NCBI RefSeq assembly: GCF_902459465.1
Contig: NC_047067.1
Span: 16,554,001 to 16,618,000, forward strand
Reading direction: 5' to 3'
Origin: Asterias rubens
Lineage: Eukaryota
DNA: 64,000 nucleotides
This document shows positions 28,469-52,301 of the stretch, in pieces. The translations under genes and the position numbers were made by a program. Every line of letters starts with the position of its first letter. Position 1 is the first letter of the stretch. The notes beneath the pieces were generated by a model. It saw nothing but the letters and a program-made list of their open reading frames with translations. It was not told where the DNA came from and ran no database searches.

Positions 28469-29923
28469 TATTAGGTGTTCGGGCAACAGCCCGAACAACT
28501 CATTGATTTTGTTCGTTTTTTTTTTTTTTTTTTTTTTTTTCTTATTCTTCTCGCTGTCGATTGTCCGCAAGAAAAAGCATAGATGCGAAGCTTGCATTAA
28601 GTTGAAACTTTGCACACAGGTAGACAATAACCAGTAGATGATACAAAAGTTTTTACGTCACGATGACGTCATCAGTTGACGAGATACACTAATTCAAAGT
28701 TTATTATTTCAAAAAATCATAACTTTTGATCTACATGAGGGATTTTTATAATCAATACATCATCGGAAAGGGCATTAAAAACTCCGTAAACGCCTCACAG
28801 ACATGACCCCATTTTGATTTTGTCTTCCGGCTCAAAAGAGAGGTTGAAAAATTCCAAATTCACGTCTAAAGAACAACGTAAATCCCCCGTTGGTATGTGC
28901 ATAAACATTACACTTAGGCATACACACAACGTGTAGTGTATTAGCTGTGCGGGAGAGTCACGCTCCAGTGATCATCCATAGAGCGCGAAAAAGCTTCATG
29001 TAGAATAGTCTTCGTTCAAGGCGTTTAACATTTTGACCTTGTCTTCTAATTCAAATCGAACTTATTGTATATTATCTACGACCGAACTACGTTGATAACA
29101 CCGGTTCCCGTCCAATCACTAAAGTTAAGCAAAATCGGGCTTGGTCAGTACTTGTATGGGCGACCAATTGGCGACCAAATTTTGTATGTTTTATTTTTTT
29201 ATTTAATTTTTTCTTCCCCTGTAATTAGCTTCGTGTTTAGTCTATTTTCAAGGCGTTTTCAACCAACATTTCTTTTCCGGTTAGTTAATATCTTCTTCAG
29301 TCGTCATTATGCATAAGGCTCCAACCACAAAAGCTATTTTGACAATCTATACATCATATGAAAGGGCTTTTAAGTACGTAGTCTGTTTTCAAGGCGTTTT
29401 CAACAAACATTTTCCTTCCGGTTAGTTAGTCTTTTCTCCAGTCGTCATTATGCATAAGTTCCTATGCCCTCAACCACACAAGCTATTTTGACAATCTACA
29501 TCATATGAAAGGGCTTTACAAACATAGTCTGTTTTCAAGGCGTTTTCAATAAACATTTTTTCCGGTTAGTTAGTCTCTTCTCCAGTCGCCATTATTCATC
29601 AGTTCACATTTCCTCGACCACAAAAGCTATTTTGACAATCTATACATCATATGAAAGGGCCTCACGTACTTCAAAAGAATTGGTATGTTGGTGACCTTCT
29701 CTTGACCTTTTGACCTTTTTAAACTGGAAGTGCCTGTAAAAGGCTTTGAAAAGGCATTATTTAAAGGCTTTTAGGTTGAAATGTAGTCTTTTTGATGCTT
29801 TACCATAAAATTATTTCACATCGAGAAAACTGTTTGGTTTTGATTTCTTTGCAATTTGACGAGTTATTAACAACACTTTTTCATTCATTCAAACACTGAC
29901 CCAACAATAGCCGAACACCTAGT
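28469..29923 (+). mobile_element. HINE-like non-autonomous element, family B copy 1, carrying a 5S-derived module
   Basis: TAGGTGTTCGG / CCGAACACCTA subterminal inverted repeats; 5' hairpin GTTCGGGC-AACA-GCCCGAAC; three ~143-bp core repeats; second copy 49441-51105. Confidence 0.7.
29074..29177 (+). pseudogene. 5S rRNA-derived sequence (about nt 1-95), 3' stem absent
   Basis: ATCTACGACC..ACACCGGTTCCCGTCCAATCACTAAAGTTAAGC..GGTCAGTACTTGTATGGGCGACC aligns by eye to the metazoan 5S consensus. Confidence 0.85.
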
Positions 29924-29931
29924 GTTTGTTT

Positions 29932-30132
29932 NNNNNNNNNNNNNNNNNNNNNNNNNNNNNNNNNNNNNNNNNNNNNNNNNNNNNNNNNNNNNNNNNNNNN
30001 NNNNNNNNNNNNNNNNNNNNNNNNNNNNNNNNNNNNNNNNNNNNNNNNNNNNNNNNNNNNNNNNNNNNNNNNNNNNNNNNNNNNNNNNNNNNNNNNNNNN
30101 NNNNNNNNNNNNNNNNNNNNNNNNNNNNNNNN
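29932..30132. other. Assembly gap (N run)
   Basis: Run of n. Confidence 1.
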
Positions 30133-45627: not shown

Positions 45628-46606
45628 TTAAACAAAAATCAATCTCTCTGTCACTGGTTTCAATTGAATGAGCTGAAACAATGAAAAACCTTAAATTTTC
45701 ATAACTCCTTATTGCAATGATGTTCTGACTTAAAACTTAAATCAAATATTGCTTCCTACATATAGATGCATATGAAAAGATAAAACTCAAAGAGTATATC
45801 ACTGGTTCCAGTTGAATGAGCTGAAACAATAAAAACAATAAATTGTCATTACTCCTTAATGCAATGATGTTCTGACTTGAAACTTAAATCAAATATTGCT
45901 TCCTACATAAAGATGCAGATGTTAAGATGAAACTGAAAAAAGAGTGCAAGTCAGTTTTTAAGTTAATATTTGTTTTGAGTAATTACCAAACGTGTATCTT
46001 CCCTTTAAACAAAAATCAATCTCTCTGTCACTGGTTTCAGTTGAATGAGCTGAAACAATGAAAACCTTACATATATGGTCATAACTCCTTATTGCAATAA
46101 AGTATTGACTTGAAACTTAAATAAAATATTGCGTCTTACATATAGATGCTATGGAAAGAACAAACTCAAAGATTGCATCACTGGTTCCAGTTGAATGAGC
46201 TGAAACAATTAAAATCTTAAATGGACATAACTCCTTTTTGCAATGATGCACTGACTACAAAATTAAATAAAACATTGCTTCTTACATGTTAATTCGGACG
46301 GAAAGATAAAACTCAAAGAGTTTATCACTGATTCCAGTTGAATGAGCTAAAACAATGAAAACCTTAAATGGTCTTAATTCCTTATTGCAATGATGCATTG
46401 ACCTAAAAATAAGGTAAACTCATATGACAAATATAAAACTCAAAGAGTTGATCACTGGTTCCAGTTGAATGAGCTAAAACAATAATGTTCTGACTTGAAA
46501 CTTCAATCAAATATAACTTCTTGCATGTAGCTTCATACGAAAAGACGAAATTTAAAGAGTTAATCACTGGTTCAAGTCGAATGAGCTAAAACACTGAAAA
46601 CCTAAA

Positions 46607-49324: not shown

Positions 49325-49386
49325 GACCTAGACTGCTTCACATCTGCGGAACGCACTACTTTGGAAAACAAACTCCGAGGAAAAAG
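49325..49386 (+). CDS. NSF: NSF exon (near C-terminus)
   Basis: AG|DLDCFTSAERTTLENKLRGK-AG|GT resembles NSF [21 protein letters not shown]; phase 0 fits the previous exon; 62 nt. Confidence 0.85.
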
Positions 49387-50034
49387 GTACTTGTACATGT
49401 GTATCTGTTCTGTTCCAAACATTGTCTGTCTGTTTCATTTTTAGGCGTTCAGGTAACAGCCCGAACAACTCTTTGTTATTGTTCGTTTTGGGTTTTTTTT
49501 CTTCTTCCTCTCGCTGTCGATTGTCCGCAAGAAAAAAACATTGTTGCGAAGCTTGCATTAAGTTGAAACTTTGCACACAGATAGACAATAACTAGTAGAT
49601 GGTACTAAAGTTGTTACGTCACGATGACGTCATCAGTTGACGAGATACACTAATTCAAAGTTTATTATTTCAAACAATCATAACTTTTGATCTACATTAG
49701 GGATTTTTACAATCAATACATCATCGGAAAGGGCATTAAAAACTCTGTAAACGCTTCACAGACATGACCCCATTTTGATTTTGTCTTTTGTCTCAAAAGA
49801 GAGGTTGAAAATTTCAAAATTCACGTCTAACGAACAACGTAAATCCCCCGTTGGTATGTGCATAAACATTACACTTAGGCATACACACAACGTGTAGTGT
49901 ATTAGCTGTGCAGGAGAGTCACGCTCCAGTGATCATCCATAGAGCGCGAAAAAGCTTCATGTAGAATAGTCTTCGTTCAAGGCGTTTAACATTTTGACCT
50001 TGTCTTCTAATTCAAATCGAATTTATTTTATATT

Positions 50035-50124
50035 ATCTACGACCGTACTACGTTAACACCGGTTCCCGTTCGATCACTGAAGTTAAGCAAAATCGGGCTT
50101 GGTCAGTACTTGAATGGGAGACCA
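50035..50124 (+). pseudogene. 5S rRNA-derived sequence in HINE-B copy 2
   Basis: ATCTACGACCGTACTACG..CGATCACTGAAGTTAAGC..TCAGTACTTGAATGGGAGACC. Confidence 0.85.
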
Positions 50125-50132
50125 ATAGGAGA

Positions 50133-50262
50133 CTTTCCAACGCTAGGCGGCAGCAGACATACCGGGTAAATTTCCATTGTTTACGTAGTTCTGAACATGC
50201 GCATAATTCTGAGAACAATGGATTTACCCGGTAAGTCTGCTGCCCTCTATCGTCCCAGAAAG
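50133..50262. mobile_element. 130-bp palindromic MITE
   Basis: GCAGCAGACATACCGGGTAAAT..CCATTGTT / AACAATGG.ATTTACCCGGTAAGTCTGCTGC; absent from copy 1. Confidence 0.75.
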
Positions 50263-52301
50263 TTGGCGACGCAATTTTGTATTATTTATTTATTTATTTT
50301 TTTTTTTCTTCTCCTATAAATAGCTTTGTTTTTAGTCTATTTTCAAGGCGTTTTCAACCAACATTTCTTTTCCGGTTAGTTAGTCTCCTCTTCAGTCGTC
50401 ATTATGCATAAGGCTCCAACCACAACAGCTATTTTGACAATCTATACATCATATGAAAGGGCTTTAAGTACGTAGTCTGTTTTCAAGGTGTTTTCAACAA
50501 ACATTTCCCTTCCGGTTAGTTAGTCTCTTCTCCAGTCGTCTTTATGCATAAGTTCCTATGCCCTCAACCAAAAGCTATTTTGACAATCTACATCATATGA
50601 AAGGGCTTTACGTACGTAGTCTGTTTTCAAGGCGTTTTCAACAAAAATTTTCCTTCCGGTTAGTTAGTCTCTTCTCCAGTCGTCATTATTCATCAGTTCA
50701 CATTTCCTCGACCACAAAAGCTATTTTGACAATCTATACATCATATGAAAGGGCCTCACGTACTTCACAAAAATGGGTACGTTGGTGACCTTCTCTTGAC
50801 ACTATATCTAGTTAGGTGTTCGGGTATACATCATATGAAAGGGCCTTACGTACTTCACAAAAATGGGTATGTTGGTGACCTTCTCTTGACCTTTTGACCT
50901 TTCTAAACCGGAAGTACACGCAGAATGCTTTGAAAAGGCGTTAATTAATGGCTTTTAGGTTGAAATGTACACTTTTTGATGCTTTACCATAAAATTATTA
51001 CACATCGAGAAAACTGTTTGGTTTTGATTTCTTTGCAATTTGACGAGCTATAAACACTTTTTTCATTGATCCAAACACTGACCCAACAATAGCCGAACAC
51101 CTAGTGTTTGTTTCTACAAACACTATATGGGTGTGTTCCTATGCATTGGTTTTTTTTCATCAAGTTCTTGAAGCTATACCTTTCCAGGTTTTCTGTTCAA
51201 GTTTGGAAATAATGGAGCAACAATCAATGTCGGGCTGGAAACTTTGTGTTTGGAGTAGCACTTTATATTTATTTATAGGACTAACAACAGCTTGCTTCTA
51301 TTTCTAGTTTTGTTTTTAATTTCTATTTCTAGTTGCCCCCACCTCCAAAAAACAACCGCAATATGTGGAGTTATTGGTTGATATTGTGCCTTCATTTTCA
51401 AAAAAGGTCCGTAAAATTATAAAGAAAGAAGAAAGCCACACAAATTTAAAGTGCAATAAAGGACAAATTTTCATTTGGCCTTCATTTGCCAAAAATGTCA
51501 ACTCCCCACCTCGCTGCACAACGGGCATCGCTAATACACTAATTTAGGCCTACATCTTCTTTTTTGTCCCCCCCCCCCTCAGCTCTAGCAATTTGGGTAA
51601 TATCAGTACAAGGTGTGACCTACACATAAGCTTAGAACAAAGCATATGCAACATTACACAACAGTTTTACATTAAACTTGCAGGGTTTGAAGATAATGAT
51701 AGTGGAAAGCTTCCCTTCAAATATTACTTACTAAGGTTCTGTAGTTTTTGAGAAATGAGTAAGACAAGTCGCCAAATAATTTTTGTCTCAGTGAGACAAA
51801 ACTTAGTTAGCATGTAAAATCCCATTAACTAGTTATGATTTTATAACTGGTAAATACGTTTTTACATGCTAAAACTGAGACAAAACTTATGTGTTTTACT
51901 TCTTTCTCAAAAACTAAAGCACCTTAGTAAGTAAAATTTCAAGAGAAGCTTTTTACTGTGATTATCTTCAAACTGTGTTAGTTTAATGTAAATCTGTGGA
52001 CATGGTATTTTGTGCTAGGAAAAAGTACACAGACCCTTAAAAGAGATAACAATTATATATATACAACATAAAAAAATAAGTGCGCGAAGTTGCAATGAAA
52101 TTAACAGGGATATAAATACGCGTGCGATACAGTGCAACGCGCAAGGTTTACACAATGTATGCTGATTTAGTGGCCACTTATTCGCTATTTTCCAAAGCCG
52201 GTCTTTATACCACCGTTAACACTCCCACCTGTGACCGGGTTTTGACCAATCAGAGACTTGAAACCGTCCAAGGTATTTATTAATAGATTTTAATAGTAAA
52301 A

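What the first reader, a model, noticed from the sequence alone, without database searches (positions are those of the whole stretch)
28469..29923. 5S rRNA-derived Pol III module carried inside a Helentron-like non-autonomous element
Seen: both copies of this ~1.5-kb element (also 49441-51105) contain about 5S nt 1-95 at the same internal position (29074-29177; 50035-50124), with A box (AGTTAAGC) and C-box-like region (AGTACTTG.ATGGG.GACC), followed by T-runs. The 3' stem of 5S is absent. The ends are DNA-element-like (subTIRs, hairpin, CTAG), with no poly-A or LINE tail. Known: 5S-derived promoters occur in SINE3 and Cassandra retroelements; I know of no established case in a HINE-type DNA element. 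Inference: captured before amplification; it could recruit TFIIIA/TFIIIC, make a ~110-nt RNA, or act as an insulator in NSF introns.
Basis: partly seen in the sequence, partly recalled or inferred. Interest (0 to 1): 0.75.

Follow-up and report, generated by a model that had tools for sequence, protein, structure and literature searches.

The report
5S pseudogene riding a Helentron element
A short, non-coding jumping element of the rolling-circle (Helentron) kind picked up the host's 5S ribosomal RNA gene once. It has since scattered about 160 decaying copies of that gene over the genome, and the copies look like passive cargo rather than a working gene or switch.

Summary
Both ~1.5-kb copies carry a 5S rRNA-like segment above Rfam's gathering score. 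All 53 non-redundant copies of this subfamily that span the site have it at the same place.

The carrier is a Helentron-type non-autonomous element (HINE). It has subterminal inverted repeats, a 3' hairpin, a CTAG end, TT on both flanks, a central 144-bp satellite and head-to-tail concatemers.

The module derives from the host 5S gene: 84-89% identity over nt 1-98, with a degenerate 3' end running collinear to a T-run. It was captured once, before at least two subfamilies split.

About 160 modules exist against about 121 genuine-type 5S genes.

The proposed Pol III or insulator role has no support:
- The promoter boxes decay as fast as the flanks, within and between subfamilies.
- The youngest sampled subfamily has lost 5S nt 1-6 and 33-43.
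- The host genes' upstream ATAAATA element is missing.

Expression could not be tested, because only contigs were available. I found no report of 5S inside a Helentron. First readers of this scan flagged the same family on four other windows of this genome.

The parts
28473..28497 (+). Copy A: 5' terminus with subTIR (AGGTGTTCGG...) that is itself a small palindrome, preceded by TT at 28471-28472
   Evidence: In 98 termini from the loci, 94 are preceded by TT.
28516..28540 (+). Copy A: T-run of variable length just inside the 5' terminus
   Evidence: 25 T. Its length varies between copies.
29074..29190 (+). Copy A: 5S rRNA-derived module. A box 29123-29137, IE 29140-29145, C box 29153-29170, first T4 at 29180-29183, T-rich to about 29215.
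   Evidence: Rfam RF00001 53.9 bits, model 1-120. The family consensus is 89% identical to the host 5S over 90 nt.
29238..29660 (+). Copy A: central satellite, 144-bp unit x 2.9
   Evidence: Tandem Repeats Finder.
29910..29931 (+). Copy A: 3' subTIR (GCCGAACACCT, 29910-29920) and the first arm of the 3' hairpin. The element then runs into the N stretch, which was not read or filled.
49443..49467 (+). Copy B: 5' terminus (mutated subTIR AGGCGTTCAGG...), preceded by TT
50035..50126 (+). Copy B: 5S module, part 1 (about 5S nt 1-95)
50127..50262 (.). Copy B: secondary MITE insertion that splits the 5S module (TIRs 50140-50171 / 50222-50253). It is not part of the family.
   Evidence: Absent from copy A. 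The inverted repeat is 32 nt at 88%.
50263..50300 (+). Copy B: rest of the 5S module and the T-rich terminator-like stretch
   Evidence: Alignment with copy A.
50333..50763 (+). Copy B: central satellite, 144-bp unit x 3.0
50801..50824 (+). Copy B: embedded junction of a 3' end (..ACTATATCTAG), TT and a 5' end (AGGTGTTCGGG), inside a ~90-bp internal duplication. It is a footprint of a head-to-tail or circle junction.
   Evidence: Arm 50813-50827 pairs with the 3' subTIR at 51089-51103.
51092..51128 (+). Copy B: 3' subTIR (51092-51102), hairpin (stem 51102-51111 / 51116-51125, loop of 4) and a truncated end that lacks the family's terminal CTAG
   Evidence: 10-nt stem, 100% complementary. Compared with 66 other 3' ends.

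Best explanation
These are two copies of a Helentron-associated non-autonomous rolling-circle element (HINE). An ancestor of the family acquired, once and at the DNA level, a host 5S rRNA gene. The captured piece was roughly the 120-nt coding region plus its T-rich terminator, without the gene's upstream promoter element or spacer. It landed in the satellite-bearing middle of the element.

The module has been copied passively ever since, through at least two subfamilies, to about 160 copies. Many of these lie in head-to-tail concatemers. It is a pseudogene cargo: it is not needed for the element's spread and shows no sign of selection.

Shown: the homology, the single origin, the family-wide presence, the HINE anatomy and the neutral decay.
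Inferred: the capture mechanism (transduction or template switching during rolling-circle replication) and the lack of function.

Young copies of the less damaged subfamily may still bind TFIIIA weakly, but nothing requires this.
For: 5S homology:
- Rfam scores of 48-65 bits over model positions 1-120 for 18 full-length copies in 15 loci (one further, shortened copy reaches 37.9), and 53.9 and 41.9 bits in the window.
- 88-89% identity to host 5S genes over 90 nt; homology is confined to the coding region, with no spacer match.

Family-wide presence and single origin:
- All 53 non-redundant subfamily-1 copies that span the site carry the module.
- Subfamily 2 carries the same module with the same derived changes, such as the A-box CG>AA change and the same 3' part.
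- 80 of 113 exact derived-A-box 16-mers have the HINE anchor 65-95 nt downstream. This is about the survival expected for an 11-mer at ~3% divergence.

HINE anatomy:
- An 11-nt subTIR pair, a 10-bp hairpin, a CTAG end, TT at 94 of 98 5' flanks and 63 of 69 3' flanks, a 144-bp satellite and concatemers.
- These match the definition in PMC4067079.

No constraint:
- Mismatch to the consensus is 2.7% for 5S nt 1-98 and 2.7% for the whole element. The boxes run at 3.2-5.2%.
- Between the subfamily consensuses, the ICR is 87.5% identical and the flanks 87-91%.
- Relative to the host gene, the consensus differs at 7 of 39 ICR positions and 8 of 59 non-ICR positions.
- Subfamily 2 is the younger of the two, at 0.8-1.3% from its own consensus. 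It lacks 5S nt 1-6 and 33-43 and has G70>A in the IE.
- Several unpaired helix positions appear in the Rfam alignment.
Against: - In subfamily 1 the internal control region is still largely intact in the consensus (A box 13/15, IE 4/6, C box 15/18 against the host), and a T4 terminator sits at the expected place. Residual Pol III activity therefore cannot be excluded.
- After insertion, TE copies always decay neutrally, so only the comparison between subfamilies bears on selection in the source lineage. That comparison rests on two consensuses.
- nt 1-98 are much better kept (about 85%) than nt 99-120 (about 50%). This could hint at past constraint on the promoter-bearing part. It could equally be a local slippage duplication (GACCAATT ... 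GACCAAATT).
- No usable expression data were available.
- The autonomous partner was not identified.
Confidence: 0.8

Rival explanations
1. The module is a working type-1 Pol III unit that the element carries and benefits from, or that the host uses. TFIIIA/TFIIIC would bind the A box, IE and C box, Pol III would make a ~110-nt RNA ending at the T-run, or the bound factors would act as a chromatin boundary in introns.
For: - The boxes are recognisable and mostly match the host gene in the subfamily-1 consensus.
- The first T4 run lies at module nt 107-110.
- Both subfamilies keep nt 44-98 while other parts were lost.
Against: - The boxes decay no more slowly than the flanks, within or between subfamilies.
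- Subfamily 2 has an 11-nt deletion upstream of the A box, a 5' truncation and an IE G70>A change, yet it is the younger and the more often matched one.
- Both host 5S array types have ATAAATA at about -30; the module has nothing like it there.
- Copy A itself has two further private C-box changes, and copy B is split by a MITE.
- In the one certain RNA library, contigs cover the element's 5' arm and satellite but not the 5S part. This is weak evidence, since only contigs were available.
Confidence: 0.14
2. The 5S piece is the head of an independent 5S-derived SINE (SINE3 / 5S-Deu type) that retroposed into one element before it amplified.
For: 5S-headed SINEs exist in deuterostomes (my own knowledge). 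Such SINEs keep mainly the first ~100 nt of 5S, as seen here.
Against: - No body, LINE-derived tail, A-rich or simple-repeat tail follows the module. It is followed by a T-rich stretch in the sense orientation.
- No target duplication flanks it. The block sits between two partial satellite-monomer starts.
- Variant modules are found in essentially HINE context only.
- Collinearity with the host gene extends to the terminator.
Confidence: 0.04
3. The similarity to 5S is chance or a low-complexity artefact.
For: None beyond the degenerate 3' end.
Against: Rfam E-values range from 1e-8 to 2.5e-11 per copy. BLAST to the host 5S genes gives E 1e-26. The reversed-pattern controls give 0-1 hits against 113 and 160 real hits.
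Confidence: 0.01

Closest known systems
HINEs / DINE-1-like elements (non-autonomous Helentrons; Thomas et al. 2014, PMC4067079), including the sea-urchin Tsp elements listed there
   Same: Subterminal inverted repeats a few nt from the 5' end and about 40 nt from the 3' end, a short palindrome 8-35 nt from the 3' end, TT-rich target with Ts on both flanks, no target duplication seen, central tandem repeats, clusters, no coding capacity.
   Different: It carries a 5S rRNA gene copy as fixed internal cargo. The autonomous partner was not linked here.
Satellite-carrying Helentron non-autonomous elements of oysters (PMC7492417; PMC8268682)
   Same: A rolling-circle element with an internal satellite-like array whose unit number varies, dispersed and forming arrays.
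   Different: In those papers 5S rDNA figures only as a FISH control, not as cargo. Different phylum.
Gene-fragment capture by Helitrons/Helentrons
   Same: A piece of host DNA taken up once and amplified with the element. PMC4067079 states that Helentrons can transduce genes, like Helitrons.
   Different: The cargo here is a small Pol III gene with an internal promoter rather than fragments of a protein-coding gene.
5S-derived retroelements: SINE3 / 5S-Deu SINEs and plant Cassandra TRIMs (PMC7215508)
   Same: A 5S-derived segment containing the internal promoter boxes is multiplied by a mobile element.
   Different: Those are RNA-mediated. In SINE3 the 5S promoter drives the element's own transcript. 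In Cassandra the 5S sits in both LTRs. Here the carrier is a DNA rolling-circle element, the 5S lies in the middle, and it is dispensable for spread and unconstrained.
Genuine 5S rRNA genes of the host (arrays on C10, C18, C38, C42)
   Same: 84-89% identity over nt 1-98 and the same box layout.
   Different: Rfam scores are 48-65 bits against 103-116 bits. Helix pairs are broken and the 3' strand of helix I is degenerate. The module lacks the -30 ATAAATA element and is dispersed rather than in rDNA arrays.

Membership tests
HINE (Helentron-associated interspersed element) | Subterminal inverted repeats of about 11-15 bp, near the 5' end and about 38-60 bp from the 3' end | tested here: met
   AGGTGTTCGG(C) at the 5' end pairs with GCCGAACACCT, which starts 41 nt before the terminus. 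A 15-nt pair at 93% is found within copy B. Definition.
HINE (Helentron-associated interspersed element) | Short palindrome/hairpin 8-35 bp from the 3' end, downstream of the 3' subTIR | tested here: met
   10-bp stem with a 4-nt loop at 51102-51125, 100% complementary. It is conserved in 66 3' ends and followed by TATCTAG.
HINE (Helentron-associated interspersed element) | Insertion in T-rich/TT sites without target-site duplication | tested here: met
   TT precedes 94 of 98 5' termini and follows 63 of 69 3' termini. No longer duplication is visible in the flanks listed. Empty sites were not examined.
HINE (Helentron-associated interspersed element) | No coding capacity; often central microsatellite or tandem repeats | tested here: met
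   144-bp unit x 3. The ORF listing shows no ORF of 90 aa or more wholly inside either copy; the three that start at 29881-29926 run out into the N stretch.
HINE (Helentron-associated interspersed element) | An autonomous Helentron (Rep-helicase-endonuclease) with the same termini in the genome | tested here: inconclusive
   There are 13 Helitron_like_N (PF14214) matches, 10 without stops inside the match, with open frames of up to 1921 aa. Neither the shared termini nor an endonuclease domain was checked.
5S rRNA gene (RF00001) | Score above the curated cut-off | tested here: met
   Subfamily 1 scores 41.9-64.8 bits against a cut-off of 38. Subfamily 2 scores 25.5 bits, below the cut-off.
5S rRNA gene (RF00001) | Intact secondary structure (helix I closed by the 3' end) and a host-like promoter context | tested here: not met
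   Many non-canonical pairs appear in the Rfam alignment. nt 99-120 are about 50% identical to the host. The -30 ATAAATA element is absent. The module is therefore a pseudogene.
5S-derived SINE (SINE3 / 5S-Deu) | 5S head followed by a body and a LINE-related or A-rich tail, flanked by target duplications, dispersed on its own | tested here: not met
   There is no tail or TSD. The modules occur in HINE context only.
Cassandra-type TRIM | 5S segment inside both LTRs of a terminal-repeat retroelement with PBS/PPT | tested here: not met
   Each element has a single internal 5S copy. The ends are subTIR/hairpin/CTAG, not LTRs.

The most novel reading that the evidence does not exclude
The younger, less damaged subfamily-1 copies are still bound by TFIIIA/TFIIIC and transcribed by Pol III. 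A rolling-circle DNA transposon would then have seeded dozens of ectopic type-1 Pol III units, or TFIIIC boundary sites, across all chromosomes, including introns. That would be the first DNA-transposon counterpart of SINE3 or Cassandra.
Probability: 0.12. Interest if true: 0.7.

Novelty: new variant of a known kind. Interest (0 to 1): 0.4.

Why it matters
1. Annotation. In this sample, 20 of 21 full-length-type modules score above Rfam's 5S cut-off. About 160 HINE-borne modules compare with about 121 genuine-type genes in the assembly. Automatic pipelines will therefore report dispersed '5S rRNA genes' on nearly every chromosome that are in fact transposon cargo.

2. Transposon biology. This is a clean, datable example of a Helentron-type element capturing a small Pol III gene and carrying it through subfamily diversification and concatemer formation. 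I found no published case.

3. Natural experiment. Many near-identical ectopic 5S internal control regions, with graded damage, could be used to ask what a type-1 promoter needs in vivo (TFIIIA/TFIIIC occupancy, upstream element).

Without expression or binding data it remains passive cargo.

Tried and rejected
- Expression. The look-up of sequencing runs returned only Logan contigs, most of uncertain RNA/DNA nature. Laying four runs showed fragmentary family contigs. In the one certain RNA library, none covered the 5S part. Contigs cannot show starts, ends or levels, so I draw no conclusion.
- Donor locus. A BLAST of the element against two host 5S array types, with their spacers, matched only the coding region. 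A third 5S variant on C38/C42 could not be fetched.
- CpG hypermutation as a confounder. CpG sites decay at 2.9% and other sites at 2.7%, so there is no effect.
- Polarity of the 5S-less related family. It may predate the capture, or it may have lost the block by recombination between the flanking monomer starts. This is not resolvable here.
- NSF. A crude search with motifs recalled from memory found nothing. An exon-like stretch at about 49325-49387 (+) resembles, from memory only, the C-terminal part of NSF. The claim remains unverified.
- Literature. Searches for Helentron or Helitron with 5S rRNA/rDNA, capture or pseudogene found no report of this arrangement.
- The N stretch after 29931 was neither read nor filled.

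Full report
**The observation**

Rfam's 5S_rRNA model hits the window twice, and hits nothing else. The hits are 29074-29190 (53.9 bits) and 50036-50148 (41.9 bits), both above the gathering score of 38.

The two elements align at 89% mean column identity, with the 5S piece at the same internal position. Copy B differs by two secondary events:
- A 136-137-bp MITE at about 50127-50262, with 32-nt TIRs at 88%. It splits the 5S piece after about nt 95.
- A ~90-bp internal duplication. This contains a 3'-end/TT/5'-end junction at 50801-50824.

The A box (29123-29137), the intermediate element (29140-29145), the C box (29153-29170) and a T4 run (29180-29183) can be read directly in copy A.

**The carrier**

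I compared 66 3' ends and 98 5' ends from about 47 fetched loci. The family ends are:
- 5' end: TT | AGGTGTTCGGGCAACAGCCCGAAC...
- 3' end...GCCGAACACCT, then a 10-bp-stem hairpin, then TATCTAG | TT.

TT precedes 94 of 98 5' ends and follows 63 of 69 3' ends.

The real terminal CTAG is about 26 nt further on. Copy A runs into the N stretch at 29932 before reaching it, and I did not read or fill those letters. Copy B stops at about 51128 without it.

The middle of the element holds a 144-bp satellite in about three units. Copies often lie head to tail, and the downstream unit then lacks the first ~50 nt. The 55-60-bp 5' terminus alone forms arrays of up to about 20 units.

All of this matches the published definition of HINEs, the non-autonomous Helentrons: subTIRs near the 5' end and 38-60 bp from the 3' end, a palindrome 8-35 bp from the 3' end, Ts on both flanks, no target duplication, and central repeats (PMC4067079).

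The genome has 13 Helitron_like_N Rep matches, with open frames of up to 1921 aa. I could not fetch their flanks, so the autonomous partner is not identified.

**The genome**

The assembly is 417.6 Mb in 150 contigs. An earlier, unchecked note of this scan calls it a sea star. I did not verify the species.

**Origin of the 5S module**

Genuine 5S genes sit in arrays on C10, C18, C38 and C42 and score 103-116 bits.

The family consensus of the module is 88-89% identical to the C18- and C10-type genes over 90 nt. Nothing else in the element matches the rDNA spacers.

In a global alignment, nt 1-98 are 84-86% identical. The rest stays collinear down to the T-run but is only about 50% identical. 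This degenerate part looks partly like a local slippage duplication. The capture therefore took roughly the coding region plus the terminator. Helix I can no longer close properly.

Both host array types have ATAAATA at about -30. The module has no such element at that position.

**One capture, carried family-wide**

- All 53 non-redundant subfamily-1 copies that span the site carry the module.
- Eighteen full-length copies in 15 loci score 48-65 bits over model positions 1-120; one further, shortened copy scores 37.9.
- A second subfamily is about 87% identical to subfamily 1 and only 0.8-1.3% from its own consensus, so it is younger. It has the same module with the same derived changes, but lacks 5S nt 1-6 and 33-43 and has G70>A in the intermediate element. 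Its Rfam score is 25.5 bits.
- A few hits keep host-like states at other positions while sharing the derived A box. This fits one ancient capture followed by divergence.
- A third, more distant HINE family has a single satellite monomer at the same place and no 5S block. The block in subfamily 1 is bracketed by two monomer starts. The 5S-less state could therefore be ancestral, or it could be a recombinational loss.

**Numbers and context**

The pattern searches are exhaustive:
- 160 HINE-type modules (27-mer, up to 2 mismatches; reversed control 0) against 121 genuine-type 5S sequences.
- 113 exact hits to the derived A-box 16-mer. Of these, 80 have a HINE-specific 11-mer 65-95 nt downstream. 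That is about the survival expected for an 11-mer at ~3% divergence, so essentially all modules are in HINE context.

Together with the missing tail and TSD, this rejects a free 5S-derived SINE.

**Test for function**

Mismatch to the consensus across the 53 aligned copies:

| Region | Mismatch |
|---|---|
| Whole element | 2.7% |
| 5S nt 1-98 | 2.7% |
| 200 nt upstream | 1.9% |
| 200 nt downstream | 4.0% |
| A box | 5.2% |
| Intermediate element | 5.0% |
| C box | 3.2% |
| CpG sites | 2.9% |

- CpG sites are not hypermutable here.
- Between the two subfamily consensuses, identity is 87.5% in the ICR, 90.6% in the immediate flank and 87% further downstream.
- Relative to the host gene, the subfamily-1 consensus differs at 7 of 39 ICR positions and 8 of 59 other positions within nt 1-98.
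- The younger, more frequently matched subfamily spreads with the more damaged module.

There is therefore no sign that the promoter boxes, or the RNA, are or were under selection.

The subfamily-1 consensus still has most box positions, so residual TFIIIA binding cannot be excluded.

Expression could not be assessed. Only assembled contigs were available, and they cannot show RNA ends or levels.

**Comparison and novelty**

Gene capture by Helitrons and Helentrons is known. So are 5S-derived modules in the retroelements SINE3 and Cassandra. I found no report of a 5S gene carried by a Helentron-type element.

I rate this a new variant of a known kind. It is real and tidy, and it is relevant to annotation: these copies pass the Rfam cut-off and outnumber the assembled genuine genes. 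On present evidence, however, it is passive cargo.

First readers of this scan noted the same family on four other windows of this genome. None of those notes had been followed up.

Noticed in passing
L044:2989-4078 (G000:C16:9015171-9016260); also G000:C2:6875962-6876638 and L053 (C13:6891493-6891702): The 55-60-bp 5' terminus of the element (palindromic subTIR plus T-run) is amplified on its own into tandem arrays of up to about 20 units, upstream of a normal copy.
   Followed up: partly
L060 (G000:C3:12512000-12521999), L003/L027 (C12:4129164-4133763), L055, L056: Copies lie in head-to-tail concatemers. After the terminal CTAG and a T-run, the next unit starts at about element nt 50-70, so it lacks the 5' subTIR. 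Units of both subfamilies are mixed within one array.
   Followed up: partly
window 50127-50262: An unrelated ~137-bp MITE with 32-nt imperfect TIRs is inserted into the 5S module of copy B.
   Followed up: partly
window 50801-50824: Copy B contains an internal 3'-end/TT/5'-end junction. It looks like the footprint of a circle or tandem junction of the same family.
   Followed up: partly
G000:C42 and C38 (e.g. C42:113631-113948): A third 5S gene variant (C box ...GACCTCCTGGGAATACTG) forms dense arrays on two small unplaced contigs, with spacings as short as about 199 bp. It makes up roughly 95 of the ~121 genuine-type 5S sequences.
   Followed up: no
L040, minus strand, about 2861 of the reverse complement (G000:C18 array): One unit of a genuine 5S array has an internal deletion of about 28 nt. 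It joins ...GTCCGATCA directly to GTACTTGG.
   Followed up: no
G000:C2:149256, C6:9938656, C15:12917596-13996237 (several), C92:15560, C24:828192: There are 13 Helitron_like_N Rep matches, 10 without stops inside the match, with open frames of up to 1921 aa. Six of them cluster on C15. They are candidate autonomous Helitrons or Helentrons.
   Followed up: no
window 45651-46410: Two adjacent arrays of a 147-bp tandem repeat (2.0 and 2.6 units, 82-89% matches). They may be the satellite core of another element.
   Followed up: no
L002:678-750 and L013:3380-3452: tRNA-model hits (46.9 and 37.6 bits) lie next to two family copies. They may be tRNA genes or tRNA-derived SINEs.
   Followed up: no
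L015:3040-3760, L017:2960-3830, L010:2925-3720: A related but distinct HINE family (80-91% identity in shared parts) has one satellite monomer, a different 3' arm and no 5S block. It often lies directly after a 5S-bearing copy.
   Followed up: partly
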